From positions 1 to 64,000 of the IMG/VR virus record IMGVR_UViG_3300042326_002445: a stretch of 64,000 nt of DNA. One strand, 5' to 3'. Positions 46,880-64,000 of the stretch are shown in pieces (position 1 is the stretch's first letter; every line of letters begins with the position of its first letter). Made by a program: the position numbers and the translations under genes. Under the pieces are notes generated by a model that made no database searches, had not been told where the DNA came from, and saw only the letters and a program-made list of their open reading frames with translations.

Positions 46880-49800
46880 ATGGCTTACATAATTAACTAT
46901 AAACCTAATTTACATGACCTGTACACCTATGGGTCTCAGCCGATTATAGATCCTAGTAATTGGCAAAATAATAGAAGAGTATATCCAACTGGTTATAATC
47001 AAAATTTATTTATTAAAGATCCATTTTATAATTTAAATTTTAATGTTGATTTTAGCGGAATGGATCGTGAAGGTAGGGGTGCTCCTGGTTACGGATTTAA
47101 TCAATACGAAGGTCAGTCTGGGTATCTACCATCCGGTGTTTTGGTAAATTCTGGCAGTGGATCTGTTACTCTGCCTAGCATAGCTGGCCAGTTTAGGTCG
47201 TTTGGCAACAATGCAGACTGCTACCATTTAGGCTGTCCTGTTGGTAATTTTGAAATAGCTTCTAATTATAATCATTGGAATAATGGAGCATGGGCAAAAG
47301 TCTTGATTAGCCCAAAACATTTTCTTGCAACAGCACACTATGTTGGTTCTGGCAACAACAACACTTCAATACGCTTGCTTGGAAAAAATAATCAAGTAGT
47401 TACTAGAAATGCAACAAAGCTTATAGACTTTAGTAATTCATCTAATTTTCCACCTGGATATAATTGGCCAAATTCATCTTTTGATTATACTTTATTTGAA
47501 TTAGACACTGCTCTTACAGAGCAGGAAATGCAACAAATTAAAGTTTATAAATTTTTAAATGCATTTAATTTGCCAACAAGTGTTCCACTTTTTTATGTTT
47601 CTCCTCAAAGCGTTGTATCTGTACTGAATTCTTTAGGAAATGATTATTTTAATATAAATTTGTATCCTGATGCTGCATATAGAGGCAGTTTAGTTTCCGG
47701 CGTTCCAACGCAATCTACATTTAGTGTTTGGGTTGGCGACAGCGGGACTCCAGTGTTTGCTTATGTTCCTGGTATTGATGAAACATGTTTTTTATACTCT
47801 GCTTGGGGTGGAATGACGATATCAGACAACGGCAATACTGCAAATCCAACGGCTACAAAAAAATGGTTTGATGCTTTAAAACAATATATTTTTGATAGAA
47901 TCGGGTACAATATTGGCTTAGTCAATTACTCTACTACCGGAGGCGGCAATTCGTCAAGCAGTAGCTCCATAGGTAGTTCAAGCAGTAGTTCAAGCAGTAG
48001 TTCAAGTAATGTTGACTCAGGTTTGTGGATGCCCATATCTTCTGATAATCCGTTTGCAAGGAATATCGATATGACTTCCGATACTGACTCTCCTCCTATA
48101 GCTCGTTGGTCCAGTGTTCCATTGCAGTGGATCCATGATGGTGAGTCGGTAAAGGCCTCCGTTGTCGCCTATCACTCTACAGGAATAAAGCGTGTAGATT
48201 TTATATGCGATGGAGGAGAGTACGAATCTGGAGCTCATATTATAGGTGTTATAAATCCGGTTGCTGACTCTAGTTCTAAGCAAGATGAGTATGCTTGCAG
48301 TATAGATATAAATGATTCTTGGTCCGAGGGAATACACACAATAAGAGCTATTGTTTATGCAAATAATGGGACAAAGAGAGTACTTCAAGGTTCTTGGTTG
48401 CCTAAATATAGTAGTATATCTGATCCTTATAATTATTTTAATAATGGAGAAGTCGATTTTACTTTTATTGTTAATCGTGGCTCTTATGATGGCAATACGG
48501 TATATGTAGATGCGGTTAATGGAGATGATTCGAATAATGGTTCTTTTAATAGCCCATTTAAAAATTTATGGAATGCGATTCCCGCAGCACACGCATTTCA
48601 TTTAGAAAATTCTATTAAAGAAGATGTGATTATATGCAAAGCTGGAGAGTACAGGCTAAGTCCATTGTTAAATGGTGATTATTCTTCTGGAACTCCATCT
48701 GCACTTGCTTTGGGTGCTGGAAGAATAGGTTGGTTAAAAATAAAAGCGCTGGATGGTTTAAGTAAAAAAGATGTCGTAATTACAAATCGTTCAACTAATT
48801 TTGGCAGTGTTGCCAATCCGACGAGCTATGCTGTAAAATCAAATACTTTAGTCTCTAGGTTTACTGTCTTTGAAAATATAACATTGGAAAATTTCTATGA
48901 CAGTAGTACAAATGTTTCGGGAGAAAAAGATTACATTATTTCTACTGACGGTTCTTATGGATTTGATTCTAGAGGTGTGTGGTTAAACAACTGCTCTATT
49001 AGAGGACGCTCAGGCGTCTCTGTTGATACTCTAGTATCTACTTTGAACAATCAAGTTAATATTTTTTTTAAAGCATATCCGGGTATTGCTCAAAATGTAG
49101 TTGGTTTTGCCACTAATTGCAATGTAAATAGTCTTTATAGAGGATTTGACGGTTTTGTAATGTTAAAGCAATGTGGAATTGGTAATACTGTAGAGTTTGC
49201 AATTAAAAATTGTGCTTCAATTTTCTCTTGCAATATATCTAATGTCGGCAATGTTGGTGCTGTCGCAGATTCAGCTGTCATTAATTTTAGCCATACTTCA
49301 TTGGCAAAAAGTAACATTATAGTTGCAAAGAATCAGATTAATAAATCTGCTATATCTCATTTTAGGATTAATCCACATCGTAACGTTTTTGATTCAGAAA
49401 TTTACTTTGAAGGTTTTGCAATTGTATCAAATTATTTTTCTAGAGCTACTGGAGGTCCAGGTAAATCATACATATATAATGGTATAAAGCAGATTTTCAT
49501 GTCACACAATAGTATGTTAGACTATTTGTCTATACATGATGCTAGTGGTGGAGTTTGGGGCGGTGATGTCTTAGTCTCAGACGTGTATTGTAAAAGTAAT
49601 CTGCTCAATGGGATTATTGTAGACTCTACTTCTGGTTCGTCTGCGTCCCTTGGAGCAGGCTCTGTCGCATTAAATCAGGGATTTTTAAATTCTAATTCAG
49701 AAATATCTTCCAATATATTTTTATTACCAACTCAGTCAAATAATCCGTTATTTTTATCATTAATTGTTAATGATAAAAATAAGCAAGTTAATCAAAGTGT

Positions 49801-52800
49801 TCATAAAATTGTAAAAAACTATAGTGAGGGTAATCTTTCGCTTTTATGTGTTAGTTTAAATGGAGTGTCTAATCCAGCTAAAGGAATAGAAACAGCTACA
49901 TTGTTAAATACTGATATTTTAGGAAACTCTTATGAAGGTTCAAAGTCCGACTGTGGCGCAAGACAGGATTGCACAGAAGAAGTTTCGCCAGATATTATAG
50001 AAGTTGCAGATTTTCAGACAGTTCCTATTTCTGGTTTTCCAGTTCTTGGATCTAATCAAGTAGAATTTTTTCAGTCTTCCACATTTGCTTTACAATATCA
50101 GTTTAGTGCGTTTGATATGGTTTTGTGGTATGATCAAAACGTAAGAAATTTTCCAGTATCTGCCTCAGAAGTCGGGTCTGAATATTATCCGGGCGGCTCA
50201 TATGAAACTTGCCAGATTTGCACGTTAGGTTCTGGACTTTGCACCAGCACTGTTGACGGTGGCATAAATTGGTTTAAGCGATGGAGCTTACCATCAAGTT
50301 TGACTTACGAACTTTCAACTTTGCCTGCATGTGGTAGCGGAAATACTTCAAAAATAGCTGGCACAAGAGCAGCATTTAAAGAATATTTTGATGTTGATGG
50401 AATGATCAGGGGAATGTCAAGATACAGTCCAGATTGGGCTTTAGTATTTTTACATGGCGGCTCTGAGCCTTTATGGTGGGACACTCAAATCCCAGGGATG
50501 CAGCAGTGGGCCTTGTTAGCAGATGATGGGGAAGAATCTACTTCCATGGGATTGGGATTAGACGTTGTTCAGGCATATAAGGACGCATCTAATAAGTATA
50601 AACAAAAATTAATGGCTTATTTTTTCCCATTTGCTTGGATTGAGCTTGATTCTTCTGTTTATCCATATGCTTTAGACATTTTTGGAAATCATGTTATTGA
50701 AGGTCGTCACGGACCTAATATTAGTTATAGATCTTGTTTCAATAGTGCATTTGTTGAATTACTTGCTAAAATACACGTTGAGATGGCTCAAAAATGCTAT
50801 GATCTAGAAACTGGATATGGGTTTAATGGTTGCATGTGGGATGCAGCTCCATTGTTTTATACACTAGATTTTAGTCCAGATGCAATATCCGCATCTGGTA
50901 TCGATTCAACTACAAACTTTCCATGGCCATTGAATAATCCAGCAGACGGCTCTGACACCACTGCTTTGACTGACTTTGTTAGTAGTGTAACTGCCAATGC
51001 CAACCCTGGAACTTTGCTACTAAGAGATCCCAATCCTTCTTTTGGATGGACTCAGGCAGTAAAAGATAAGCTTCAAGCTTATGTATATGCTTTAAATAAT
51101 AAACAGCCAGATATAGTCAGAACTATAAGAGAGGCAGTTGATCAGGCTGGCTACTCGGAATTTGCTATACTGCATGCAGTAGGAAACTCTCAGCCTTCTT
51201 TTGAATGGCCTGGGAATTCTGAAGACGTTGTTTTGTATGCGTCTGGAGTAAAAACTGAAATCGGTGCAGAAGGGTATGTTCGCAGAAGACAAGCACCTGG
51301 AGTTACGAATAAAACTGGCGCTAAATCAGTGCCAGATCTTTGGCTTGCGATGCATACCGACTTGCTCCTTTCTCAAGCTCGCACAGGCAAGAGGGCTTAT
51401 GGATGGCAGATTGGCCAGTGGTTTATACCAAACTGGATATCTGGGGGTACTTGCGATGATACCTTCAAGTCTTGTTTGACATCTTTTGATAGTGGGTATT
51501 CTGGTAAGGTAGAGTTTAAAAATAATGTTCTTCCAAGAGACATAGCTGTTCGTGGTTGGCTGGAAAATCAATCTCTTCTTGCTCTAGTTTCACATACAAC
51601 TCCAGAATTTATGTATGCGTTTTATGATTGGTACAAATATGACCAAATAGAAGATCTTTCTGGTTTTGAAAATAGTGCTGACGCATTTGCTATTCAACAC
51701 TTACCCTTCATGAGAAGAATCTCGTCCATATTAGGTTCAATAGGTGACGCAAATGTTAGGTTGTTTAATAGAACTAATGTTGCATGGTGCGTAATATTGC
51801 ACAGGCCAGAAGTAGGATGGGGAAGTTATGCTTTTATAAACACTGGGATAAATGAGTCTTATGCTAATTTCTCATATTATTGGCCTATTTTTGGCGCAGT
51901 ACAAACGTGTGTCGAGCACGGCATCCCATATGTAATCGCGCAAGATGATGCATTTACGGTTAATAATTTTACTAATTCTGGCGTTGTTATAGTACCATTT
52001 GATAAAAATTTATTACCCATTTCTGCAAGACAAGAATTAGACAGTTTTAATGGACATGTAATATACTTGCAAGATGAAATTGCAAATGGTCAAGTTGATG
52101 ACAATTTCCATAATACGGAATTAGTTGGGAATAAGACTAGAGGGCAAGTTGCAAGAGACCAGCTATGGACGTTAATTCAGCAAGGTTCAAGAAATATCGT
52201 ATTACAGACAGAATTTTCTTATCCAGATAGTTTGCCTGAAAAACCAGTTCCTATAGCAGGATATGAAATAGGATTAGACTCATATGGGAATGAATCATTG
52301 CTTGTTACGCTTATTGCAGATGCTGCATGGCATGATGCAAGAAAGTTTGGCTTCTTTGGGCTTACGACAAATAATTATCCTATTAATGGAACATGTGGTA
52401 GGCAAAATCTGCTACTAGCTTCTCCAAATGATCCAGAGAATGATCTGGTAAGTTCGTTGGGTTTAAGGAAGATTTTAGATGTTTGCAGTTGCACTTATTC
52501 TGATACTTTTACGACTATCAACACCCTTGCTGGAAGAGATTGTTATTATGTTGAGCACGCTGCTGCAGGAGCTATTCCAGTAGATGTATTACCAGCAAGA
52601 GGAAAGTTAAACTACTATGCAGGATATCCTCCAGTTTGGAACAGCAATAGAGGTGCTAGAATAACTTTCAATGCATCTCAGTCTCCTTATAGATTACGTC
52701 AATTACTACTTGATAAAGAAAGTGGAATATTTGGACCAGTTGATATGTTTGTTAATGGGGATATGATAGATGTTGTACCTTTTGAAATAGGTTCAGTTGT

Positions 52801-55800: not shown

Positions 55801-58800
55801 GGCTGAAAGCTCTTTAAGATATGATAATAACAACACCTCTAGAATACCACACTTTACAAAAATAATAAATGATCCAAGAGCATCTTTAACTGATTCCAGT
55901 GCTGGATATGCCTCAGAAATAAATCAAACTTTAGTTCAACAGTTAAGGTTAAATGATTTCTACAATATTAATGATTTTGATGTGGTTGACACAAAGACTG
56001 TAGACGACCCTCAGTTTAGGGGCGGATATTTGCATTGGGATTACGTGATGTATAGGCATGCTATTTGGTATGCGCAAAAACATTGGTATGATGTTATTAG
56101 CGAATATTTCCCAGGCCATAATTCAACCCATGTATGGACTTTTTATGTGCCAAAAGAGGACCATTTTAATGATATGAATGGGCATATCACATATCGAGAC
56201 ATGCTTTGTGGAGATACTGCCAATCCTTTACTTTTTGCAGAAGCTGGTGGCATTAGCGTAAACAGTGAAATAGATCCAAATAATAAAACTCGCACAAGAT
56301 TTCTTTCTCAATACAATCCCGGAGGCACTCCTTTTGGCTCAAGAGCATGGAATGCTCTTTTGCTTCAACAGCAAGAAATTAAAGCTATTAGGAGGCATGG
56401 GGAGAACCAGAAGTTTATACCATGGATAGGTAGTAGAAACTTAACTCTTAATAATGCCTTTGGTGGTAAAAATGATGTTAACCATAATTCTCTATGGGCT
56501 GAAGGCGTGTATCATTTAGCTCTACATAATCCTAATGCTATATACATGTTCTATCCAAGAAATTCAGATGGAGCTGGAGATACTGCTTGGTATCCTGAAA
56601 ATGGTTTAGTCTCTTATCAGCTACTCAACTCAATACTTAAAGAAGTTAATCAGCGAACTGGAAACAAGATTATATCTCTTGTAGAAAGTTCTGTGCAAAG
56701 AATAGATCTAGATTCTAAAGTACTTATAACTGGATGCAAAACTATTAAGAATAAGCATTTGTGGAGAATAACAGCTGATGTTATTAATGTGAACGAAGTA
56801 ATTATTGATGGTAATGTTTTTGCGGTTGATTCTAACTCTCCTGCTATTTGGTATGAAACAGAAATTAATGTTGGTTCTATAGATATTTTATCATATAATG
56901 CGGCGACTAAGTCAATTATACTTATTTCTTCAGTTGCTGAGGGACCTTTGTGCAAGCAGTGCTTGACCTATAGGGTCGCTCCAGCATTTACTGCTGACGA
57001 GATTAGTGTAGACAGTAGTTCTCTTCCTCAAAATGTAAGTAAGATGATACAAATTAGTGATAAATATCTCACTAGGAATTCTTACGATGAGGCAGACTCG
57101 TGTGGCGCAGGTGTATTCAGAATAAATGCTTGCCAAAGATATGCATTTTATGAAAACGACAATTTACGTTATAATTACAATGGCGCGATTAACTATATTA
57201 ATGAAGTTGTGCTAAAAAATAGTGATGTTAATCTGATCGACTACACAGGTTATATTGGTGCAGAATTTTCAAAGATAAAGCAGTTGTTTGTTGAGTACCT
57301 TTCTAATGCTTCTGGGCTAGCAGTAATGGGAGATTCTCTGCAATCTGGCATATCTCAAATGTTTGAAAATATTCAGGCAATAAAGAATTCTTCTCCTAAA
57401 GCAAAAGTAGGCTTATTAAATTGTCCTGTTGTTCCTTTTATTGCACCTAATATAACTTGGTCTTCTGCTAGTGATTCTGTAAAGTTCAACTATATAGATA
57501 AATGTGCTTCAATTATAGAAGACGTAATTTCAGAATCTGATTTTATATGCTTAGATCTTCGTCAGGAAATTTCAGTAAAAAATACTGAAGAATACGCTGA
57601 ATACCTGGCCTACATTAGATCTGTTAGTAAGGGCTTTAATGATTGGTTGGCATCCAAAAATCTAGTTAAAACAATTTTTGGTATTGTTTCAAAAGAAAGT
57701 TATGTAGACTTTAATGCCTTACCTGGTTATCAGTATAGACAGTCAGTAGCGATTACAGCAGATTATGTTCATGGTTTTATAGATAGTTCAGACGTTATTC
57801 TTAGATGGCTGGAATTGTTTGACTCAGATTCTTCTAATGATAATGGGGCTTTGTCTGCAATTTCAAATGTCATTGGTTTTGAAATAAGCGGTGCAGACAG
57901 TACTAGTTATAACGCAATTGCTGCTTATGGATTAAATAATCTTGCTGAGTTAAAATCTGAAATTTCTAGAAATTGCAGATCATATAACTCTACTAATGAC
58001 AACGTTAACACTATAGGTTTTAGACCTTCAAGAGGTCCTGATTATCCTGAATGGTTATCCAATTCTAGTCTGGCTATGAAATTTAATTTAACTGCAGAGG
58101 ATATAAAATCTTGTGCAGCTTTAGCGGTTCCGCATATGCCAGCATCTTCTTCAGTTCCAGTAGATGATGTCATTGTATGTTCTTTTATAAATACACAGTA
58201 TATTTCTACAAGTAGTCTATATGATATTCAAACTTCTTTGCCTTGCAGTACTACAAGAAATATAAATACTGCAAGATCTTCTTTCTTAAATGGATTAAAA
58301 ATTCAAGATTTCGTAGATTATGCGCAAAGTTATTCCCCAGATATACTTGTATTTAATGCTCATCAATATGATGAGCCATTGTGGTATGCAACTGATACAG
58401 CAATTGGACAATGGAATATTTTGACAAATGATCCACGGTATGGTCTAGGATTTGGTGTTGATATTCTGCTTTCTTACTCTGTAGCTGCAAATTTTATAAA
58501 TGCTAGGTGTATCGTGGAAATAAATCCATGTTCATTTGTTACCTTGCCTGCCGCCAAGTATCCATATAGTCTTAATTGTTTTGGCGGGATTATAAAAGAA
58601 AACTTTGATGGCGGAATCAATATATCTATAAGAAGTTTTTTGAACCAAGATTATGTAGATTTAACTTTTGATTATCATAATGAAATATTTGATAAAGGTA
58701 TAGACGGGATAATGTGGAGTAGAGAAGTAGTTTCAAAATTTGGAGATTTTTCTACAAATGTAATTGAAAAGTTTGCTAGATATTTAGGTTATGAAAATAT

Positions 58801-61800
58801 TGATGACTCAGAATTTAAAGAAAAGTTTCCATTCCCAGTTGCTTGTGGATCTATTTTAGGAAATTACTTATATAATGCTGCTGGCTTTACTGGAAGTTGC
58901 GATTCTTCTGCAAATATAAGTGTTGAAGACATTGCATTTAAAATCCCAACATTTGGCACCATATTCACTCAAGACATAAAAAATACCGTTATAGAATATC
59001 ATGCTTTTTGTCACAATTTAGCTAATACAAATATACTGTATTTGCAAAGTAAAATTAACGAATACTATGGATCTAGAGTAAAGGCCATAATTCCTCACGT
59101 TGAAAATGATATATTTTATAATTGGAAGTCTTGTTTAAGCGCTGAGATTTCAAATTACTCTAGTATTGTTAGTACAAATTCAGGAATTGAAAAACAAGCT
59201 CGTTCAAGGAGAATCCAAAATCCCAGCGCAGCTAGTAATACAGTAGATATACAAAGACCTGGCGCTGCGACCGTAGAAAATTTTGGACTTGACTTACTTT
59301 CATCTGCAGATGGTAAGAAAATTATTGTCAAGAAAATTCCAAATATACTTAGATACAGAGACACTGATTTTAGTAGCTTGTGGAATGAATTTGACAATGT
59401 TAATTCTACTAATATAGTAGAAGATGGCATCGTGAGAGAGGATGGCATTAAGGGCCATTTGGCTTCCTGTGTATTTGACTACATGCGCGCCGGTCATATT
59501 GTTATGTTAGATATGCCAAGCTGGAGTACATATAAGGATGATGGAGATACTTTATCAAATTCTTATATAAATAGCGACCCTCCCAGAAATGATATGCCAT
59601 TTATATTAAATGTCATAGATCTCAATAATCAGTTGAAGCAAAACGTATCTAGTTTATATAGACAAAACAAGCATGCTTGGATTGGTATACATTATGCAAA
59701 CAGAGCAAGAAAGTATATTCATGTATCAGATGCAGTCTCTTCAAATGGTCAAGAGTTTTACAGTGACATTAATCTTGACCTTTCTCGCTATGGCTATTCT
59801 GGAAATATGACAATAGGAGAATTTGCGTGGCCAATAATAGGAGCATACGAAACTTGCATATACAGTGGAATTTCTTCTGCAGTTATTAATGATTCTAGTT
59901 TAGAAAATGGTGATTTTTCTAGTCTAAAATTAATAATTATTCCGCATAGAAAACTTCTTAATAGTTTGCAAAAAGATAAGCTCAATCAATTTGAGGGTTC
60001 TGTAATTTATTTAGAAGATTTGTTGAGTCAAACAGGAAATCGCTGGTATAGTACGGCAAGCGATTTATCTGAATCCACGCCCGATTACGTTACTTTATAT
60101 AATTTGCTTTCTTTGCGGATCAAGAACTTAGTTGGCAGTTCTCCAATAAAAGTAAAATTAAATGTTGACAATTCTATAGTGACTGATTCTGGTAAGTACT
60201 TTTTGAAACCATCAAGTGTTTTTGACGCAGGCTTAAATAGCGATGTGCATAGAATCGTCGTGTGTGTTTCTAATGATAGAAATTGGGCTGATGTTAGAAA
60301 TAATACAAATGAAAATGGCATTTTTGGATTGACATCAAGAAACAATGATTTGTTAAATACTCAATCTGCTAATCAAATTTTCTCTAGTATTTATAGTAAT
60401 GACTCATTCTATGCAGATGGCTCTTATCCAGTTTTGGGTCAGTTTGCATATTATGCAGGAGATCCTCCAGCTGGATTTGGCAAAAGTTTCTCTGTATTTA
60501 TAACTTTCAACAATTATATATCTTTGGTGTCTGCTAAACAGATATCTTTAAATTTTGCTGATAATACTGTAGATAGTAAAGTTGTTTCTTGGTCTAACGG
60601 CTCAAGCGGTCAGTCAATATCTTCTAATTTTATATCTGATTTTTCTTGGTTTGAAATAGAATTTAAGTACGAAACGCCGCCTTCTAGTTCAAGCAGCAGT
60701 AGTTCAAGCAGTAGCAGTAGTTCAAGCAGCAGTAGTTCAAGCAGCAGTAGTTCAAGCAGCAGTAGTTCTAGCAGCAGTAGTTCAAGTTCTGGGTGTGTTG
60801 TTTGGACTGGTCCTGGCTGCCCGGACATGGATGGTGACGGGTTTGTTGGTGGTGCAGACCTTGGAGTATATTTCAGTGCTTTTACAGATTATAACCCGAT
60901 TGCTGACTTAAATGGAGATGGCGTTGTTAACGGAGCGGATCTTGGTATTCTTCAATCATATTGGGGTTCGTGCGTCGAATGTCCTAATTGGAACGGTAGC
61001 AGTAGTTCAAGCAGTAGTTCAAGCAGTAGTTCAAGCAGTAGTTCAAGCAGCAGTAGTTCAAGCAGCAGTAGTTCAAGCAGTAGTAGTTCAAGCAGTAGTT
61101 CAAGCAGTAGTTCAAGTTCTGGGTGCATTGTGTGGAATGGTCCTGGCTGCCCGGATGCAAATCAGGATGGAGTAGTAAATCAGTTTGATTTCGACATATT
61201 CTTGGCTTCTCAAGAAGAGTATAATCCTATTGCAGATCTTAACGGTGATGGTTTCGTAAATGGTAATGACATAGGTGTTTTACTTTCTTTTTGGGATAAT
61301 TGTGTTATATGCCCTAATTGGCCTCCTAGTTCTTCTAGTTCTTCTTCTAGTTCTTCTTCTAGTTCTTCTAGTTCTTCTTCTAGTTCTTCTTCTAGTTCTT
61401 CTTCTAGTTCTTCTTCTAGTTCTTCTTCTAGTTCTTCTTCTAGTTCTATTAATTTGTTTGGGGTTTTAAATACAAGGTCTGCTGTTGGGCCAAATCAGCC
61501 TTCATGGTGGTCTACTGCAAATGTGCATTTTCAATCCTTTAATCCATATGCAACGATCAAGCAGATTTATGAAGGCAATATGGAGGAATCTGCTTCGGCT
61601 TTAATTGAGCCATCATTATTGCTAGCATACGACAATCCATCTTCTGGTTGTTCCGTAAGGCCATATTATAGTTCAAGTCCAAACGGATATCCGCCTGGTT
61701 ATGAATTTGTTTATAGGTCAGAATATAATTGGATTCGAGTTGAAGGAAGTAATTTTAAGGAAAGATTTAATAATGGGCTTAATCGATGGTTTAATCCTGA

Positions 61801-63670
61801 GCAACGAGCGATAGTAGCTCACAGATATAGGCCAGATATTGTTATGATAGATTTGCATAATGGAGATGAGCCATTTATATATAAGTCTGCGGTTCCTCAA
61901 GCTCAGAGTTCTTTAATGATATCTGAAGAATATGGCTTGCCCGAGTATGACATGGTAAGGCCTTTTATAAGAAAGTCTCATGAGTTAGGAATGAAATGTA
62001 CAGCTTATTTTAAACCTCATTTTGCTTTCTTGAAAGAAGATATATTCCCGCCAGCATTAACTGCTAATGGCCAAAAAATTAGAGTAGAAATCAATCTCAC
62101 TCAATCGTGTAGCGTGCAAAGAAGTATATTCAATACTAACTTTAAGAATTTTTTGAAGAATTGCATGATAGAAATAGTAACTCCAGAATCTGGTGGTGGA
62201 TTAAATTGCGATGGCATTTATTGGGATTCAAGTTTACTTGAGGAGTTTTTAGATTTTAGTAATGACGCAATAGATGTTTTTGCCAAATATTTAGGATACG
62301 AAGGTTTTGATGATCCTGATTATATTTCTTGGGCTAGTGTTAATTTTCCATTCCCAAAAACTTCAGGCTGGGAAGTTTCAACAGAAAATGGATATGTTGG
62401 AGGTGGCGATAGACCATCCTACAGGGATGCATATCCAGACAATACATTTGAAGGTCTTGGTTATTGGAATCTTGTGAACAATATCAATGATTTAGATGCA
62501 AATGAAATTGCAAATTTAAAATCATATGTTAGTATAATTAAAAATAAGTACCACGAAATACTTAGAGAGATATCTGACGCTGTTTCTGTCGCCAGTAATG
62601 GGAATGCAGTATTTTTCCCAGGCGAGCTTCCATCTTGGCCAGACCAGCCACATGGTGCTGTTTCCGTAGAAATAGCCAGACATACTCATGCTGTAAAAAC
62701 TGAATTTGCAGTAGAGCCAAGAGGCTATAGTGGACTTAGAAAGAAATCAGAGCTCACTGATTCTGTTCTTAATAATGAAAGATTGTATTGCGACATACAA
62801 AGGCCGTCAATGTATCTCTCTATGACTTTGAACCAGAAACTTGATTTTGCCTCTGGAAATAAAACTGCTATTCAGTGGAATCCTCAAAGGGTTTGGATAT
62901 CTGATTTGCCTTTAGGCACATCTGGAGCAGCAAATACTTTGACAACTTTTAATAGTGATAGATTTTATCTATATCCAACTGGCTATCCGCTATTTTTTGA
63001 AAGAGGATTGGGAAGAGAAGATAGCATTCATGGATATTTAAGAGCAGTATATCAAATTATGATTAAAAATGGTAATATCTTTGATTTTAATACATGGTAC
63101 GGGACTGGATGGACTGGAGATCAAGATGAATTTATACAAGACGCAACTTTGATTAATAATGACGGTTATTATAATAATCCTAATAAGGGAGTATCTCCTG
63201 GAAATACTTATTCATTTTGGCGTAAAGCACTTTATCATGCAAGAAAAATGAAAGAAGAAATTATTAAAGAAGGACTAATATTAAGCATAAGGGAAGCTTA
63301 TTCTTGGGCTGCAATACATGTTTCAACCGCTGGCAGAATAGGGATCAACGCTCCAGTTGCTTGGGGCTCAGGCTATGTGACTGGATCTAATAAGCTTATA
63401 AACTTAACAAATAACACAAATTCTTTAGGACAAAATTGGGGAGAATTCTGGTGGCCCATACTCGGCGCGATGCAATCTTTTGAAAATAAGATGATTCCTT
63501 ACAGCTTAGTTCTTGACGATCAGCTTAAAAATGGGGAATTAAATGGGATTAAGGTAATAGTAGTACCTCATCGTGAATGGCTTTCTCTTGCTCAAGAATT
63601 GCGTCTTGTAGAATTTGTAAGCAGAGGTGGAAAAGTGGTTTATATGGATGAAATATTTAATGTAACTTGA
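46880..63670 (+). CDS. Giant (5596 aa) multi-enzyme protein: trypsin-like protease, beta-helix, three GHL6/GH42-like modules, SGNH esterase, GH56-like barrels, two dockerin-like domains
   Basis: 16.8 kb uninterrupted ORF with TAHY/FDY/GDSG, VYVDAVNGDDSNNGS...PFK, GESNS...HWD, three copies of WPI.GA, DLNGDGVVNGADLG and poly-Ser spacers. No signal peptide. Confidence 0.8.
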   Translation: MAYIINYKPNLHDLYTYGSQPIIDPSNWQNNRRVYPTGYNQNLFIKDPFYNLNFNVDFSGMDREGRGAPGYGFNQYEGQSGYLPSGVLVNSGSGSVTLPSIAGQFRSFGNNADCYHLGCPVGNFEIASNYNHWNNGAWAKVLISPKHFLATAHYVGSGNNNTSIRLLGKNNQVVTRNATKLIDFSNSSNFPPGYNWPNSSFDYTLFELDTALTEQEMQQIKVYKFLNAFNLPTSVPLFYVSPQSVVSVLNSLGNDYFNINLYPDAAYRGSLVSGVPTQSTFSVWVGDSGTPVFAYVPGIDETCFLYSAWGGMTISDNGNTANPTATKKWFDALKQYIFDRIGYNIGLVNYSTTGGGNSSSSSSIGSSSSSSSSSSSNVDSGLWMPISSDNPFARNIDMTSDTDSPPIARWSSVPLQWIHDGESVKASVVAYHSTGIKRVDFICDGGEYESGAHIIGVINPVADSSSKQDEYACSIDINDSWSEGIHTIRAIVYANNGTKRVLQGSWLPKYSSISDPYNYFNNGEVDFTFIVNRGSYDGNTVYVDAVNGDDSNNGSFNSPFKNLWNAIPAAHAFHLENSIKEDVIICKAGEYRLSPLLNGDYSSGTPSALALGAGRIGWLKIKALDGLSKKDVVITNRSTNFGSVANPTSYAVKSNTLVSRFTVFENITLENFYDSSTNVSGEKDYIISTDGSYGFDSRGVWLNNCSIRGRSGVSVDTLVSTLNNQVNIFFKAYPGIAQNVVGFATNCNVNSLYRGFDGFVMLKQCGIGNTVEFAIKNCASIFSCNISNVGNVGAVADSAVINFSHTSLAKSNIIVAKNQINKSAISHFRINPHRNVFDSEIYFEGFAIVSNYFSRATGGPGKSYIYNGIKQIFMSHNSMLDYLSIHDASGGVWGGDVLVSDVYCKSNLLNGIIVDSTSGSSASLGAGSVALNQGFLNSNSEISSNIFLLPTQSNNPLFLSLIVNDKNKQVNQSVHKIVKNYSEGNLSLLCVSLNGVSNPAKGIETATLLNTDILGNSYEGSKSDCGARQDCTEEVSPDIIEVADFQTVPISGFPVLGSNQVEFFQSSTFALQYQFSAFDMVLWYDQNVRNFPVSASEVGSEYYPGGSYETCQICTLGSGLCTSTVDGGINWFKRWSLPSSLTYELSTLPACGSGNTSKIAGTRAAFKEYFDVDGMIRGMSRYSPDWALVFLHGGSEPLWWDTQIPGMQQWALLADDGEESTSMGLGLDVVQAYKDASNKYKQKLMAYFFPFAWIELDSSVYPYALDIFGNHVIEGRHGPNISYRSCFNSAFVELLAKIHVEMAQKCYDLETGYGFNGCMWDAAPLFYTLDFSPDAISASGIDSTTNFPWPLNNPADGSDTTALTDFVSSVTANANPGTLLLRDPNPSFGWTQAVKDKLQAYVYALNNKQPDIVRTIREAVDQAGYSEFAILHAVGNSQPSFEWPGNSEDVVLYASGVKTEIGAEGYVRRRQAPGVTNKTGAKSVPDLWLAMHTDLLLSQARTGKRAYGWQIGQWFIPNWISGGTCDDTFKSCLTSFDSGYSGKVEFKNNVLPRDIAVRGWLENQSLLALVSHTTPEFMYAFYDWYKYDQIEDLSGFENSADAFAIQHLPFMRRISSILGSIGDANVRLFNRTNVAWCVILHRPEVGWGSYAFINTGINESYANFSYYWPIFGAVQTCVEHGIPYVIAQDDAFTVNNFTNSGVVIVPFDKNLLPISARQELDSFNGHVIYLQDEIANGQVDDNFHNTELVGNKTRGQVARDQLWTLIQQGSRNIVLQTEFSYPDSLPEKPVPIAGYEIGLDSYGNESLLVTLIADAAWHDARKFGFFGLTTNNYPINGTCGRQNLLLASPNDPENDLVSSLGLRKILDVCSCTYSDTFTTINTLAGRDCYYVEHAAAGAIPVDVLPARGKLNYYAGYPPVWNSNRGARITFNASQSPYRLRQLLLDKESGIFGPVDMFVNGDMIDVVPFEIGSVVQVQMKNEQIIPHVGICVNQDSLKISNNNEFANLLNDLQSQPTSFNVIKIRLVCGNSLVESEVVANTIFSELESHARSNPDAYDWLRNCIGEIGYPTSHTLLGFLESTEVNPCGNGDFSIGGIVIQNEGICTIASNLPSLSSLYQEVNANSACECESSSTYKIYASKAKIDRSLNPDDGSSWASFVENEISSVSDISNGLMLFIKPVSDNSSIYYNIDSNGMPIIDGVVKYISDINDAIFNYTLGEKDITDYYAGVVIDFNHLFNINDNQSSLHAYACSYPFTINSQGSDSYDNVRRAIAYVNGNLIALINAIKFINQNISVSIRGLGRINDSDFEESMTSKTPYSAINCTPNARKELSKRVSEFYGPLLEACDFIYLWNGNESAEPDLSSALDSVSASKLRLSCLVKHFEYRQADCPSIFVEINGVHLSSDGLGQNDYCKVSNAEIIKESIDPFTNKNIDGFVYYSEQENIEKLIFENCPISISNPEVYGAVNSCWDLSIDGCSDQSTLIDVFETSIYNNISFINSYINNTSSNLYVPLIIMIGESNSGGLARNSQALPEELGIRPEVKILNNYTLNFENLNISSSGNNILDHRGPNGIPDVTDSVWNSNGGSPHGWELGLANAVRDKMFSRDVAYLIKAGHGGSKIGDDSIPGDWDTSGIYWNLFLQRYSAAISELNVDGYSPQTYIWYEIGINDCISNVNVDQWKNKLVQKINNIRSVTGVNSPVFITLLPDVAKTGDLTDSISDFNNAILEICVDQQLVYWVKSDDAHLRFNDIYHWDYYGMKLISSRMSKLSANTIGEGGNYVVSLDNPPLQPDYSDYRPIVAAVPYNEEPDPVLEFVYPVFTVRGRLSGGPTLDEPGTGPTPSHIGNPSDAIGFFNARGIPAVKRFVFYFNIGSSTFDGVFADPIYNQTYDKLYNPADSCINVNGEIVKQDTLDPREGSNPTFRGNLPFISPWTLGANTRLEQFTRQWVAEYKNLNGKIYGFISDNESLNPTGFWAESSLRYDNNNTSRIPHFTKIINDPRASLTDSSAGYASEINQTLVQQLRLNDFYNINDFDVVDTKTVDDPQFRGGYLHWDYVMYRHAIWYAQKHWYDVISEYFPGHNSTHVWTFYVPKEDHFNDMNGHITYRDMLCGDTANPLLFAEAGGISVNSEIDPNNKTRTRFLSQYNPGGTPFGSRAWNALLLQQQEIKAIRRHGENQKFIPWIGSRNLTLNNAFGGKNDVNHNSLWAEGVYHLALHNPNAIYMFYPRNSDGAGDTAWYPENGLVSYQLLNSILKEVNQRTGNKIISLVESSVQRIDLDSKVLITGCKTIKNKHLWRITADVINVNEVIIDGNVFAVDSNSPAIWYETEINVGSIDILSYNAATKSIILISSVAEGPLCKQCLTYRVAPAFTADEISVDSSSLPQNVSKMIQISDKYLTRNSYDEADSCGAGVFRINACQRYAFYENDNLRYNYNGAINYINEVVLKNSDVNLIDYTGYIGAEFSKIKQLFVEYLSNASGLAVMGDSLQSGISQMFENIQAIKNSSPKAKVGLLNCPVVPFIAPNITWSSASDSVKFNYIDKCASIIEDVISESDFICLDLRQEISVKNTEEYAEYLAYIRSVSKGFNDWLASKNLVKTIFGIVSKESYVDFNALPGYQYRQSVAITADYVHGFIDSSDVILRWLELFDSDSSNDNGALSAISNVIGFEISGADSTSYNAIAAYGLNNLAELKSEISRNCRSYNSTNDNVNTIGFRPSRGPDYPEWLSNSSLAMKFNLTAEDIKSCAALAVPHMPASSSVPVDDVIVCSFINTQYISTSSLYDIQTSLPCSTTRNINTARSSFLNGLKIQDFVDYAQSYSPDILVFNAHQYDEPLWYATDTAIGQWNILTNDPRYGLGFGVDILLSYSVAANFINARCIVEINPCSFVTLPAAKYPYSLNCFGGIIKENFDGGINISIRSFLNQDYVDLTFDYHNEIFDKGIDGIMWSREVVSKFGDFSTNVIEKFARYLGYENIDDSEFKEKFPFPVACGSILGNYLYNAAGFTGSCDSSANISVEDIAFKIPTFGTIFTQDIKNTVIEYHAFCHNLANTNILYLQSKINEYYGSRVKAIIPHVENDIFYNWKSCLSAEISNYSSIVSTNSGIEKQARSRRIQNPSAASNTVDIQRPGAATVENFGLDLLSSADGKKIIVKKIPNILRYRDTDFSSLWNEFDNVNSTNIVEDGIVREDGIKGHLASCVFDYMRAGHIVMLDMPSWSTYKDDGDTLSNSYINSDPPRNDMPFILNVIDLNNQLKQNVSSLYRQNKHAWIGIHYANRARKYIHVSDAVSSNGQEFYSDINLDLSRYGYSGNMTIGEFAWPIIGAYETCIYSGISSAVINDSSLENGDFSSLKLIIIPHRKLLNSLQKDKLNQFEGSVIYLEDLLSQTGNRWYSTASDLSESTPDYVTLYNLLSLRIKNLVGSSPIKVKLNVDNSIVTDSGKYFLKPSSVFDAGLNSDVHRIVVCVSNDRNWADVRNNTNENGIFGLTSRNNDLLNTQSANQIFSSIYSNDSFYADGSYPVLGQFAYYAGDPPAGFGKSFSVFITFNNYISLVSAKQISLNFADNTVDSKVVSWSNGSSGQSISSNFISDFSWFEIEFKYETPPSSSSSSSSSSSSSSSSSSSSSSSSSSSSSSSSSSSSGCVVWTGPGCPDMDGDGFVGGADLGVYFSAFTDYNPIADLNGDGVVNGADLGILQSYWGSCVECPNWNGSSSSSSSSSSSSSSSSSSSSSSSSSSSSSSSSSSSSSSSSSGCIVWNGPGCPDANQDGVVNQFDFDIFLASQEEYNPIADLNGDGFVNGNDIGVLLSFWDNCVICPNWPPSSSSSSSSSSSSSSSSSSSSSSSSSSSSSSSSSSSSSSSSINLFGVLNTRSAVGPNQPSWWSTANVHFQSFNPYATIKQIYEGNMEESASALIEPSLLLAYDNPSSGCSVRPYYSSSPNGYPPGYEFVYRSEYNWIRVEGSNFKERFNNGLNRWFNPEQRAIVAHRYRPDIVMIDLHNGDEPFIYKSAVPQAQSSLMISEEYGLPEYDMVRPFIRKSHELGMKCTAYFKPHFAFLKEDIFPPALTANGQKIRVEINLTQSCSVQRSIFNTNFKNFLKNCMIEIVTPESGGGLNCDGIYWDSSLLEEFLDFSNDAIDVFAKYLGYEGFDDPDYISWASVNFPFPKTSGWEVSTENGYVGGGDRPSYRDAYPDNTFEGLGYWNLVNNINDLDANEIANLKSYVSIIKNKYHEILREISDAVSVASNGNAVFFPGELPSWPDQPHGAVSVEIARHTHAVKTEFAVEPRGYSGLRKKSELTDSVLNNERLYCDIQRPSMYLSMTLNQKLDFASGNKTAIQWNPQRVWISDLPLGTSGAANTLTTFNSDRFYLYPTGYPLFFERGLGREDSIHGYLRAVYQIMIKNGNIFDFNTWYGTGWTGDQDEFIQDATLINNDGYYNNPNKGVSPGNTYSFWRKALYHARKMKEEIIKEGLILSIREAYSWAAIHVSTAGRIGINAPVAWGSGYVTGSNKLINLTNNTNSLGQNWGEFWWPILGAMQSFENKMIPYSLVLDDQLKNGELNGIKVIVVPHREWLSLAQELRLVEFVSRGGKVVYMDEIFNVT
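47270..47930 (+). other. Trypsin-like (clan PA) serine protease domain
   Basis: VLISPKHFLATAHYV (His at 47336), FDYTLFELD (Asp at 47483) and VGDSGTP (Ser at 47741) give an intact triad in the canonical order. Confidence 0.8.
48497..49970 (+). other. DUF1565-like motif followed by a pectin-lyase-like right-handed beta-helix
   Basis: TVYVDAVNGDDSNNGSFNSPFKNLWNAI...IICKAGEY, Asn-ladder repeats, and a closing DILGN...DCGARQ. Confidence 0.7.
54410..55190 (+). other. SGNH hydrolase, sialate O-acetylesterase (SASA)/CE6-like domain
   Basis: Block I IIMIGESNSGG, block II YLIKAGHGGS, block III WYEIGIND, block V DIYHW. Confidence 0.8.
60683..61447 (+). repeat. Poly-Ser tracts (36, 41 and 40 residues) flanking two Cys-bracketed dockerin-like domains
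   Basis: Ser tracts at 60683-60790, 60998-61120 and 61328-61447. Dockerin-like units at 60794-60991 and 61124-61321 (C.VW.GPGCPD...YNPIADLNGDG.VNG.D.G.L.S.W..CV.CPNW). Confidence 0.95.
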
Positions 63671-63733
63671 ATCTCTTGTAGTAGTATTTTAAATTAATTT
63701 ACGAAATATCATATAAGGACAGTAATAAATATC
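63671..63733 (+). promoter_or_regulatory. Intergenic region, candidate promoter and RBS (TACGAAATAT at 63700; AAGGA near 63715; AATAAATA just before the ATG)
   Basis: Second sizeable gap; same 10-mer as 46804. Confidence 0.4.
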
Positions 63734-64000
63734 ATGAACGATCCAAGAAACAAGGGAAGATGGTACTCTTATGAAGATCAGATTTCAGAGTCTGAAAAAT
63801 TTATAAACGCTGTTAAGTCTTCCGCTGGAGAACCAGACTTTAGCGGTACTGTTACCAGTTATGAATATACAGATGGAACCTATAGGAATAAACAGGCCGG
63901 TTGGTTTAGATTGTCTGATCCAGATCAAAATGGTAAATTTTTGATAGGCGTTCATTTACTCAACGATATGTCTTGGATGGACATGAGAAAAAATTCTAGC
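63734..64000 (+). CDS. Hypothetical protein, 3'-truncated by the window edge
   Basis: ATG at 63734 opens a frame (MNDPRNKGRWYSYEDQISESEKF...) with no stop before 64000; absent from the ORF track because it has no stop. Confidence 0.65.
   Translation, partial: MNDPRNKGRWYSYEDQISESEKFINAVKSSAGEPDFSGTVTSYEYTDGTYRNKQAGWFRLSDPDQNGKFLIGVHLLNDMSWMDMRKNSS

What the first reader, a model, noticed from the sequence alone, without database searches (positions are those of the whole stretch)
46880..63670. 5596-aa single-chain 'Swiss-army-knife' hydrolase
Domain order read from motifs: protease (47270-47930), Ser linker, Ig-like plus beta-helix (48090-49970), GH module 1 (about 50380-52810), GH56-like barrel, SGNH esterase (54410-55190), another barrel-like module (about 55270-56940), second GH56-like barrel, GH module 2 (about 58280-60670), Ser36, dockerin, Ser41, dockerin, Ser40, GH module 3. 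Inference: protease, de-O-acetylase, lyase fold and glycosidases together could strip an acetylated glycoprotein, S-layer or capsule coat. This many enzyme classes on one putative virion chain is exceptional.
Basis: partly seen in the sequence, partly recalled or inferred. Interest (0 to 1): 0.85.

Follow-up and report, generated by a model that had tools for sequence, protein, structure and literature searches.

The report
Giant multi-enzyme fibre protein of jumbo phage
A single uninterrupted 5,596-residue gene of an uncultured ~224-kb phage strings together a protease-like domain, an acetyl-esterase, three sugar-cleaving-type modules, two calcium 'dockerin' connectors and several unknown domains. 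It is one shuffled variant of a family of giant, probably tail-associated, host-coat-stripping proteins.

Summary

**Supported domains**
- An N-terminal trypsin-like domain with canonical His/Asp/Ser motifs.
- A SASA/SGNH esterase with intact blocks I, III and V.
- Two GC-type dockerins.
- Three paralogous ~800-aa modules. Their AlphaFold model matches three-domain GH42/GH35/GH164 enzymes, and they are homologous end to end to GHL6-family proteins.

**Weak or unsupported domains**
- Ig-like (Big_7) and beta-helix (DUF1565 cap) get only sub-threshold hints.
- The two "GH56-like barrels" are not supported.

- Module 2 has lost two acidic residues kept by every module-1 and module-3 relative, so it is probably a non-catalytic binding module.
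- The gene belongs to a recurrent family of giant mosaic genes (2.4-4.4 kaa) in related ~245-250-kb contigs.
- In those relatives the same blocks are fused to the neighbouring genes orf45083 and orf63735, so gene borders move.
- Three junctions are confirmed in independent assemblies, so an assembly chimera is unlikely.

Virion (tail-fibre) location is inferred, not shown. I rate it a new variant of a known kind (phage depolymerase fibres).

The parts
46880..63670 (+). Whole gene, 5,596 codons plus a TGA stop
46880..47269 (+). N-terminal region, aa 1-130, unknown. It has no signal-peptide-like hydrophobic stretch and lacks the anchor motif shared by orf39030, orf42728 and orf45083.
47270..47935 (+). 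Trypsin-like (PA-clan) serine-protease domain, aa 131-352. Candidate triad: H153 (nt 47336), D202 (47483), S288 (47741).
   Evidence: Motifs; ESM Atlas 0.97 with 194 shared features, all ten best named hits in one clan. No Pfam or PDB sequence hit.
47936..48007 (+). Ser-rich linker 1 (aa 353-376), encoded by the same tandem DNA unit as Ser36 and Ser41
48008..48469 (+). Probable bacterial Ig-like domain (aa 377-530)
   Evidence: Pfam Big_7 E=0.0025, 18.9 bits, below the cut-off of 24.1
48470..50059 (+). Candidate right-handed beta-helix (aa 531-1060). Not verified.
   Evidence: Only the N-terminal cap motif VDAVNGDDSNNGSFNSPF, matching DUF1565 at E=0.16. No relatives and no PDB hit.
50060..50287 (+). 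Conserved leader of the module-1 block (aa 1061-1136)
   Evidence: Conserved in P0003, P0002 and L001
50288..52813 (+). Module 1 (aa 1137-1978): TIM barrel, GATase-like middle domain and beta-sandwich of GH42/GH35/GH164 and GHL6 type. It keeps W-D1321 and K-T-E1460.
52814..54391 (+). Segment s8 (aa 1979-2504): a Cys-rich alpha/beta subdomain followed by a beta/alpha region of unknown fold. It always follows module 1 in relatives.
54392..55204 (+). SGNH/SASA-type acetyl-esterase (aa 2505-2775): S2520 in GESN, GIND at 2667-2670, D2750 and H2753 in DIYH
55205..56935 (+). Segment s10 (aa 2776-3352), unknown. The only lead is to TIM-barrel glycosidase-like proteins.
   Evidence: ESM Atlas leads; one relative in the C-terminus of P0002; no other homologues
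56936..58201 (+). Segment s11 (aa 3353-3774), unknown. It precedes module 2 here and in L005.
58202..60679 (+). Module 2 (aa 3775-4600), a paralogue of module 1. W-D is replaced by W-S and K-T-E by S-T-N, so it is probably non-catalytic.
60683..60790 (+). Ser36 linker
60791..60997 (+). GC-type dockerin 1 (two Ca-binding loops, DMDGDG and DLNGDGVVNGAD, with flanking Cys pairs)
60998..61120 (+). Ser41 linker
61121..61327 (+). GC-type dockerin 2
61328..61447 (+). Ser40 linker (different codon unit, TCT-rich)
61448..63667 (+). Module 3 (aa 4857-5596): TIM barrel plus GATase-like domain, no C-terminal sandwich. It keeps W-D and K-T-E.
45083..46789 (+). orf45083 (568 aa), the neighbouring fibre-like gene with the shared N-terminal anchor motif. 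In the relative L005 its homologue is fused in front of the module-1 block.
63735..64000 (+). Start of orf63735 (2,587 aa, running past the window end; also carries a GC-type dockerin). It is in the same frame as the giant gene, separated by 64 nt that hold TGA and TAA. In L005 and L008 its homologue is fused directly behind a module-3 homologue.

Best explanation
The gene encodes a real single-chain, modular protein of an uncultured jumbo phage (contig IMGVR_UViG_3300042326_002445, 223,646 nt). It lies inside a block of at least 72 kb made up almost entirely of giant genes on one strand, which looks like the tail-fibre and host-recognition region. Its most likely role is that of a long, virion-borne 'enzymatic fibre' that binds the host's outer glycan and protein layers and digests a path through them before DNA injection. 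Shown: one uninterrupted ORF; a trypsin-like domain with an intact triad; an SGNH/SASA esterase with intact catalytic blocks; three GH42/GHL6-type three-domain modules; two GC-type dockerins set between poly-Ser linkers. Modules 1 and 3 keep the family's conserved acidic residues and module 2 has lost two of them. The same blocks recur, in a different order and with different gene borders, in related phage contigs. Inferred: the esterase removes O-acetyl groups; modules 1 and 3 cleave glycosidic bonds; module 2 acts as a lectin-like binding module; the protease cuts a surface protein layer. GH42 enzymes are trimers held together by the middle domain (established knowledge), so I suggest the chain forms a homotrimer, as phage fibres usually do, with the GH42-like modules as trimeric beads. 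The dockerins are Ca-dependent connectors. They could fasten the chain to another virion protein, or plug into the cohesin-type sockets that hosts use for their own C-terminally dockerin-anchored surface proteins. Fusions seen in relatives (orf45083-like to the module-1 block; module 3 to orf63735-like) suggest that orf45083, which carries the shared N-terminal anchor motif, the giant protein and orf63735 form one structure.
For: ORF continuity. Viral origin and contig identity. Weak tail-protein profile hits in upstream genes, phrog_31 central tail fibre J at 5.6e-8 and phrog_13857 tail protein at 1e-4. Protease. Esterase. Dockerins. Module fold: AlphaFold pLDDT 71 and pTM 0.77; Foldseek top 50 all GH42, GH35-type or GH164 at probability 1.0 and E from 1e-11 to 1e-7; hhalign to GHL6-family proteins at 98.8% over 505 columns. 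Loss of conserved acidic residues in module-2-type copies only. Synteny and block shuffling with a 249,908-nt relative. Continuity of dockerin, Ser linker, module 3 and the orf63735-like part in one ORF in JGI contig Ga0247840_10008483. Collinearity of aa ~1061-2349, weakly extendable to aa 931, in a Logan contig. The 3,146-aa relative keeps its length in five assemblies. The 3,003-aa neighbour is identical in two samples. Anchor motif shared by orf39030, orf42728 and orf45083.
Against: No virion evidence exists: no proteomics, no recognisable capsid, portal, sheath or baseplate gene within the 72 kb read, and only two weak tail-family hits. The giant protein lacks the N-terminal anchor motif of its neighbours. 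About 2,400 of its residues (aa 1-130, 377-1060, s8, s10, s11) have no verified fold. The catalytic roles of D1321, E1460, E1301 and E1464 are inferred from conservation, not from a structural superposition. No Pfam GH model hits the modules directly. No cohesin was found in the window. A relative, P0002, sits among replication and modification genes rather than in a fibre array.
Confidence: 0.6

Rival explanations
1. Self-processing polyprotein. The N-terminal trypsin-like domain cuts the 5,596-aa precursor, for example at or near the Ser linkers, into several separate enzymes or fibre subunits. On this view the single chain is only a means of expression, which would explain why gene borders can move without harm.
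For: A protease with an intact triad sits at the very N-terminus. Gene borders between the same blocks differ among relatives. Giant Omnitrophota proteins with N-terminal C39 or S8 peptidases have been proposed to be cleaved in the same way (10.1101/2023.11.21.568195).
Against: The relatives that carry the module-1 block (P0002, P0003, L005) have no protease domain, so processing is not required for these blocks. No cleavage motif was identified. Poly-Ser linkers are ordinary flexible spacers of extracellular multi-domain enzymes.
Confidence: 0.15
2. Not a virion part. The protein would be a soluble or host-surface-docked enzyme complex released at lysis, using its dockerins to bind host cohesins. 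It would destroy receptors and matrix on debris and neighbouring cells, helping progeny to escape or spread through biofilm in the way a receptor-destroying enzyme does.
For: It lacks the anchor motif of the neighbouring fibre genes. The dockerin type is the one used as a C-terminal anchor of cellular surface proteins in Phycisphaerae and Flavobacteriales. P0002 lies outside a fibre array.
Against: There is no signal peptide. The gene sits in a tight co-oriented array with fibre-like genes. In relatives its blocks are covalently fused to anchor-bearing (orf45083-like) and orf63735-like proteins.
Confidence: 0.15
3. The contig is cellular, for example from a predatory or episymbiotic bacterium with giant surface proteins, and was misfiled as viral. 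The protein would then be a cell-surface, prey-degrading giant like the Omnitrophota dockerin-type proteins.
For: The architecture resembles those giants in having dockerins, GH-like domains and an N-terminal peptidase. No viral hallmark gene was seen in the 72 kb read. There is no match to 50,697 phage records.
Against: The source is IMG/VR. Related contigs cluster at 245-250 kb. Genes are tightly packed on one strand. There are two tail-family PHROG hits. Neighbours of P0002 look phage-like: small ORFs, an SNF2 helicase, DNA methylases and glycosyltransferases. No relative of the modules was found in 185,579 species genomes. The protein has no transmembrane or signal segment.
Confidence: 0.07
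4. Assembly chimera: the ORF is stitched together from several genes or genomes at the low-complexity Ser repeats or elsewhere.
For: Three of the linkers (the short N-terminal one, Ser36 and Ser41) share the same 12-15-nt tandem DNA unit. The junctions around aa 1050, 2470-2505, 2775, 3352 and 4600 have no independent confirmation.
Against: The frame is kept across every junction and GC3 is uniform. Three junction regions are reproduced in independent assemblies at 37-58% identity: aa ~1050-2470, aa 3356-4590, and dockerin to Ser linker to module 3. The dockerin copies are diverged. The number of Ser codons may still be imprecise.
Confidence: 0.04

Closest known systems
Phage tailspike and tail-fibre depolymerases, including SGNH-esterase tailspikes such as phage G7C gp63.1, and multi-depolymerase jumbo phages such as Klebsiella phiK64-1 and phiKp24 (PMC9700779; the rest from my own knowledge)
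   Same: Virion-borne enzymes that strip capsule or O-antigen. Modular build: an N-terminal attachment part followed by enzymatic or binding domains. Extensive domain shuffling (PMC10684548).
   Different: Known cases put one catalytic domain on each protein of 500-1,300 aa and widen their range by adding separate proteins. Here up to five predicted catalytic modules of three classes, plus dockerins, sit on one 5,596-aa chain. The GH42/GHL6-type three-domain module has no significant match among predicted viral structures (BFVD, best E=1.8e-3).
GH42 beta-galactosidases, GH164 beta-mannosidase and GH35-type GlmA/IaSGT, together with the uncharacterised GHL6 family (PF14871)
   Same: Same three-domain layout: TIM barrel, GATase-like trimerisation domain and beta-sandwich. 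Profile-level homology to GHL6 plus GH42M-type proteins over 505 columns.
   Different: About 10% identity. No direct Pfam hit. Embedded three times in a giant chain rather than free-standing. Catalytic residues not mapped. One copy is degenerate.
Giant 'Archaeovorin' and 'Dockerin-type' proteins of Omnitrophota (10.1101/2023.11.21.568195; 10.64898/2026.06.07.730766)
   Same: Very long chains that combine dockerins, glycan-processing domains and an N-terminal peptidase, proposed to attach to and degrade another cell's surface.
   Different: Those are cellular, 30-147 kaa, membrane-anchored and linked to secretion systems. This one is on a viral contig, is ten times shorter, has no membrane segment and shows no sequence relationship to them in my searches.
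Cellulosomal enzymes (dockerin-bearing CAZymes with Ser/Thr-rich linkers)
   Same: Catalytic modules joined by low-complexity linkers to type-I-like dockerins with two Ca-binding loops.
   Different: The dockerins are internal and duplicated, not C-terminal, and are of the 'GC type' with flanking Cys pairs. No cohesin partner was found in the window, and the context is a phage.

Membership tests
PA-clan (S1/S6-like) serine protease | His, Asp and Ser triad in that order, within the motifs TAAHC-like, D-[IV]-x-L-[LI]-x-L-like and GDSGGP-like, with spacing of about 45 and 93 residues | tested here: met
   LATAH153Y, D202YTLFEL and GDS288GTP; spacing 49 and 86
PA-clan (S1/S6-like) serine protease | Significant match to a family profile or to the double beta-barrel fold | tested here: inconclusive
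   No Pfam, NCBIfam or PDB sequence hit. ESM Atlas feature score 0.97 to trypsin/Peptidase_S6-like clusters. No structure was predicted.
SGNH hydrolase / SASA (PF03629) esterase | Profile score above the curated cut-off | tested here: met
   25.3 bits against 24.8, E=1.4e-5, profile positions 5-220 of 226. The margin is narrow.
SGNH hydrolase / SASA (PF03629) esterase | Block I nucleophilic Ser (GxSN), block III GxND, block V DxxH | tested here: met
   GES2520N, GIND 2667-2670, D2750-I-Y-H2753
GH42 (CAZy) / clan GH-A three-domain glycosidases | Architecture of (beta/alpha)8 barrel, GATase-like trimerisation domain and beta-sandwich | tested here: met
   AlphaFold model at pTM 0.77. Foldseek to 6y2k, 5dfa, 4oif, 5xb7, 7vkz, 7omi and 6jow at E from 1e-11 to 1e-8, probability 1.0, TM 0.36-0.49.
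GH42 (CAZy) / clan GH-A three-domain glycosidases | Match to family profile PF02449 or PF08532 | tested here: not met
   No hit at E<=0.1. Only a faint GLMA_2nd match at E=0.059 at the C-terminus.
GH42 (CAZy) / clan GH-A three-domain glycosidases | Acid/base Glu on strand 4 and nucleophile Glu on strand 7 | tested here: inconclusive
   Conserved acidic residues exist (E1301, D1321, E1460, E1464), but the model coordinates could not be superposed on a GH42 structure.
GHL6 (PF14871) putative glycosidases | Homology to proteins that carry the GHL6 domain | tested here: met
   hhalign of A2 against P0016 (Pfam GHL6, 8.3e-12) gives 98.8%, E=4.4e-17, 505 columns; against P0021 it gives 96.4%. There is no direct Pfam GHL6 hit on the window modules.
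Dockerin (type I / NCBIfam GC-type) | Profile scores above the cut-offs, and two EF-hand-like Ca loops in each module | tested here: met
   PF00404 at 29 bits against 22.9; NF041540 at 46.9 bits against 29, in two stretches. Loops D-x-D/N-x-D-G found twice in each module.
Dockerin (type I / NCBIfam GC-type) | A cognate cohesin partner | tested here: not met
   No cohesin family among the Pfam hits of any window ORF. The rest of the genome and the host were not examined.
   The candidate motif reads IDFN, IDFS, IDFS and LDFP in the four full-length family members.
   Model pLDDT 51. Best Foldseek E=0.22 (GH1); PH-20 at rank 15 with E=1.0. The two segments show no similarity (z=-0.3). The second segment was not modelled.
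Pectate-lyase-like right-handed beta-helix (tailspike fold) | Match to a beta-helix family profile or fold | tested here: inconclusive
   Only DUF1565 at E=0.16 over 29 residues of the cap.
Phage tail fibre / receptor-binding protein | Location in a tail or fibre gene module | tested here: inconclusive
   Co-oriented array with genes that hit phrog_31 and phrog_13857 weakly. Synteny is conserved in a 250-kb relative. No baseplate, sheath or tube gene was recognised.
Phage tail fibre / receptor-binding protein | Conserved N-terminal virion-attachment domain shared with paralogous fibres | tested here: not met
   The motif LRExAGxRGxAPAxR...VYVWGVE is present in orf39030, orf42728 and orf45083 but not in the giant protein. 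In L005 the module-1 block is fused behind such an anchor.
Phage tail fibre / receptor-binding protein | Presence in the virion | not testable with these tools
   Needs proteomics or EM of particles.

The most novel reading that the evidence does not exclude
A clade of aquatic jumbo phages spends about a third of its genome on a 'viral cellulosome': a set of giant, freely re-partitioned chains whose trimeric GH42-like beads, esterase, protease and inactive lectin-like copies are held together by GC-type dockerins. Those dockerins may also plug the particle into the host's own cohesin sockets, so that the host's surface-protein anchoring system serves as the phage receptor. The shared Ser-linker microsatellites would act as the recombination joints that shuffle the blocks.
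Probability: 0.15. Interest if true: 0.85.

Novelty: new variant of a known kind. Interest (0 to 1): 0.62.

Why it matters
Phage depolymerases decide host range and are sought as anti-capsule and anti-biofilm enzymes. All well-studied ones carry one catalytic domain per protein. A chain with three enzyme classes, and a family in which the same blocks are cut into genes at different places, shows a different way of building host-recognition machinery.

It also brings GH42/GHL6-type modules and GC-type dockerins into phage biology. The uncharacterised GHL6 family gains a biological context that could lead to a substrate. The dockerins give a testable idea for how a phage might use a host's cohesin-dockerin anchoring system.

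Tried and rejected
**Searches that found nothing**
- Direct Pfam, PHROGs and NCBIfam scans of 1,000-aa tiles found only SASA, dockerin and a faint GLMA_2nd.
- phmmer against PDB found nothing useful, for either half of the chain or for single domains.
- The A1 profile against PDB gave only weak cellulase hits.
- tblastn of four pieces against 50,697 phage records gave no match.
- A word-based search for full-length giant relatives found none. The same search for s10 found none.
- IMG/VR scans with the beta-helix region and with s10 returned only the contig itself.
- A scan of species genomes with the module profile found no relative.

**Comparisons that were negative**
- A whole-protein self-BLAST returned only the self hit. 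Tiling was needed to show the paralogy.
- Pairwise and profile tests for homology among s8, s10, s11 and the modules were all negative.

**Attempts that failed or were inconclusive**
- The AlphaFold model of s8, built from five sequences, was too poor to use.
- An attempt to walk further along the contig by pattern search returned the same stored block.
- Host inference from dockerin relatives gave no clear answer. Most relatives are in Phycisphaerae, whose GC of 0.57-0.69 is far from the phage's 0.34. A few are in Flavobacteriales.

**Ideas rejected**
- Read-through from orf45083, because the gap holds four in-frame stops.
- The ARAGORN tRNA-Val inside orf10231, because Rfam finds no tRNA there.
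Full report
**1. The observation**

The ORF is exactly as described: 46880..63670 on the + strand, ATG start, TGA stop, 5,596 codons, no internal stop under table 11. The window is 34% G+C, so chance cannot give a 16.8-kb ORF.

Poly-Ser runs of 36, 41 and 40 residues lie at aa 4602-4637, 4707-4747 and 4817-4856. A shorter Ser linker lies at aa 353-376. The 90 nt between orf45083 and this gene contain four in-frame stops, so it is a separate gene.

The window is the first 64 kb of IMGVR_UViG_3300042326_002445 (223,646 nt), and window coordinates equal contig coordinates. Every sizeable ORF is on the + strand and most are huge: 3286, 501, 1776, 356, 2808, 1849, 212, 541, 303, 1245, 1228, 783, 568 and 5596 aa. 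A 2,587-aa gene follows directly.

**2. Domains that can be named**

*(a) Protease, aa 131-352.* LATAH153Y, D202YTLFEL and GDS288GTP reproduce the three chymotrypsin-fold motifs. Their spacing is 49 and 86 residues. The ESM Atlas places aa 1-377 at 0.97, with 194 shared features, next to clusters of 250-290-aa trypsin/Peptidase_S6-like proteins, many of them from phages. Profile and PDB sequence searches see nothing.

*(b) Esterase, aa 2505-2775.* Pfam SASA (PF03629) scores 25.3 bits against a cut-off of 24.8. GES2520N, GIND and D2750xxH2753 are in place.

*(c) Dockerins, aa 4638-4706 and 4748-4816.* Pfam Dockerin_1 scores 29 bits against 22.9. NCBIfam 'GC-type dockerin' scores 46.9 bits against 29, in two stretches. 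Each module has two Ca loops and conserved Cys pairs. The two copies are diverged at the DNA level.

*(d) The three 'GH modules'.*
- aa 1137-1978, 3775-4600 and 4857-5596 are paralogues.
- A profile search of 1.8 billion representatives found 11 strong relatives. It also found weak hits that carry Pfam GHL6.
- An AlphaFold model of module 1 from 17 sequences reached pLDDT 71 and pTM 0.77.
- All top Foldseek matches in the PDB are three-domain GH42 beta-galactosidases, GH35-type GlmA/IaSGT or the GH164 beta-mannosidase. E runs from 1e-11 to 1e-7 at probability 1.0.
- hhalign links the module profile to GHL6-family proteins over 505 columns at 98.8% probability.
- Nothing comparable exists among predicted viral structures; the best BFVD match has E=1.8e-3.

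**3. A nuance inside the modules**

Across 17 family members, every module-1-type and module-3-type copy keeps W-D (D1321 in the giant protein) and K-[TS]-E (E1460). The module-2-type copies differ. In the window they read W-S and S-T-N. In L005 they read W-N and H-F-S.

I infer that module 2 is a non-catalytic, probably glycan-binding, derivative. Which residues are catalytic was not verified by superposition.

**4. Domains that stay open**

- The Ig-like region gets Big_7 at E=0.0025, below threshold. The proposed beta-helix gets only a DUF1565 cap match at E=0.16.
- s8 (aa 1979-2504) has four relatives, but its model is poor (pLDDT 51) and has no significant structural match. GH1 enzymes lead at E=0.2, and human PH-20 (GH56) appears only at E=1.0.
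- The motif that presumably suggested GH56 reads DF[N/S/P], so it has no Glu.
- s8, s10 and s11 show no similarity to each other or to the modules.
- For s10 plus s11 the ESM Atlas gives only leads to TIM-barrel glycosidase-like clusters.

**5. Relatives and the chimera question**

L005 is a 249,908-nt ENA contig that is syntenic with window 32.7-72 kb.
- Its 293-, 1234-, 939- and 684-aa genes match orf34374, orf35293, orf39030 and orf42728.
- Its 3,146-aa gene is [orf45083-like, 33% identity] + [giant aa 1050-2470, 44%].
- Its next gene, 3,003 aa, is [module 3, 37%] + [orf63735 N-terminus] + [s11 + module 2, 31-36%] + [orf63735 C-terminus].

L008 is a JGI contig. Its ORF is open at the contig end. 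It starts in the second half of a dockerin, continues through a Ser-rich linker into a module-3 homologue (58% identity), and runs without a stop into an orf63735 homologue.

In the window, the giant gene and orf63735 are in the same frame, separated by 64 nt that hold TGA and TAA.

L001 (Logan) and P0002 (4,412 aa) are collinear with giant aa ~1050-2350. L001 has a weak collinear extension back to aa 931 (E=3.4).

The 3,146-aa protein keeps its length in five assemblies. The 3,003-aa protein is identical in two samples.

So the blocks are real and recurrent, and gene borders within the array move. Three junction regions of the 5,596-aa chain are independently confirmed. Uniform GC3 argues the same way.

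What remains uncertain is the exact length of the Ser runs. They are encoded by 12-15-nt tandem repeats, and the unit is shared by three linkers.

The N-terminal 1,050 residues, the esterase and most of s10 have no counterpart in the relatives found. The protease-esterase-glycosidase combination is therefore specific to this phage as far as the data go.

**6. Function**

Two upstream genes weakly hit tail families: phrog_31 at 5.6e-8 and phrog_13857 at 1e-4. Three neighbouring genes share an N-terminal motif of the kind that paralogous fibres use to attach to the particle. Dockerins occur in three proteins of the array, seven modules in all.

The best reading is a virion-borne enzymatic fibre that strips an acetylated glycan and protein coat. 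Rosetta-stone logic ties orf45083, the giant protein and orf63735 into one structure.

Because GH42 enzymes trimerise through the middle domain (established knowledge), a trimeric fibre with GH42-like beads is an attractive model, but it is untested.

The rivals are a self-processing polyprotein, a lysis-released enzyme that is not part of the virion, a cellular origin, and an assembly chimera. Each is weighed in the report sections.

**7. Host**

GC-type dockerin relatives in species genomes come mostly from Phycisphaerae/Planctomycetota. There the domain sits at the extreme C-terminus of proteins, but genomic GC is 0.57-0.69. A few relatives come from Flavobacteriales at GC 0.33-0.39.

The phage is 34% GC, so the host is unresolved. 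A described lineage of aquatic jumbo phages of Flavobacteriales (PMC12619734) is a lead that I could not test.

**8. Comparison and novelty**

The thing works like a phage depolymerase fibre and is built like a cellulosomal enzyme. Its closest conceptual parallel is the giant dockerin-type and 'Archaeovorin' proteins of Omnitrophota (10.1101/2023.11.21.568195).

It differs from known phage depolymerases in three ways: several enzyme classes sit on one chain, the module type is GH42/GHL6, and it carries dockerins.

I rate it a new variant of a known kind, interest 0.62. It is solidly real and unusual, but its location, substrates and host are all still inferred.

Noticed in passing
window 1-64000, plus L003 (contig 61141-72244): At least 72 kb, about a third of the 224-kb contig, is an unbroken single-strand array of 15 mostly giant genes, six of them longer than 1,700 aa. 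Almost none has a recognisable family. Domains seen: RCC1 repeats (orf371), BNR (orf18139), LamG (orf39030), EF-hand and dockerin (orf11740).
   Followed up: partly
window 11740-17070: orf11740 (1,776 aa) carries four dockerin modules (Pfam 8.6e-25): one near the N-terminus and three in tandem, separated by poly-Ser linkers. With the giant gene and orf63735 that makes seven dockerins in three proteins, and no cohesin was found.
   Followed up: partly
window 39030-39300, 42728-43000, 45083-45350: orf39030, orf42728 and orf45083 share an N-terminal motif (LRExAGxRGxAPAxR ... VYVWGVE ... DCxKI). It is also present in three L005 genes and looks like a common attachment domain of paralogous fibres.
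   Followed up: partly
L001:396-4325 (Logan ERR14822385): The 42%-identical relative of giant aa ~1061-2349 (weakly from aa 931) has a single in-frame TAG at nt 2271, inside the module, and a frame switch near nt 456. This could be stop-codon recoding, a pseudogene or an assembly error. No window ORF ends in TAG (10 TAA, 4 TGA).
   Followed up: partly
window 47945-48018, 60683-60790, 60998-61120: Three Ser linkers are encoded by the same 12-15-nt tandem unit (AGCAGTAGTTCAAGC). The fourth (61328-61447) uses a TCT-rich unit. Such shared microsatellites could serve as recombination joints for module shuffling, and they make the linker lengths uncertain in short-read assemblies.
   Followed up: no
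window 63668-63737: The giant gene and orf63735 are in the same frame, separated by 64 nt holding TGA and TAA. In two relatives (L005, L008) the homologous parts form one continuous ORF, so this looks like a recent gene fission or fusion point.
   Followed up: yes
window 10364-10447: ARAGORN calls a tRNA-Val (cac) inside orf10231, but Rfam finds no tRNA at gathering threshold. It is probably a false positive.
   Followed up: yes
L004 (ENA ERZ27275072, 78-kb contig): The 4,412-aa relative P0002 (RCC1 repeats, the module-1 block and an s10-like C-terminus) lies among small genes for an SNF2 helicase, DNA methylases, several glycosyltransferases and a SET-like protein, not in a fibre array. Its locus is 43% GC against 34% for the window.
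   Followed up: no
L011-L041 (genome contigs): GC-type dockerins sit at the extreme C-terminus of 400-1,000-aa proteins in many Phycisphaerales MAGs and in some Flavobacteriales. This fits a cell-surface anchoring role that the phage domain may imitate.
   Followed up: partly
L009/L010 20468-29012: Downstream of the 3,003-aa gene, the related phage has a 483-aa gene and then a 4,294-aa gene (LamG and beta-propeller), so the giant-gene array extends further in that lineage.
   Followed up: no
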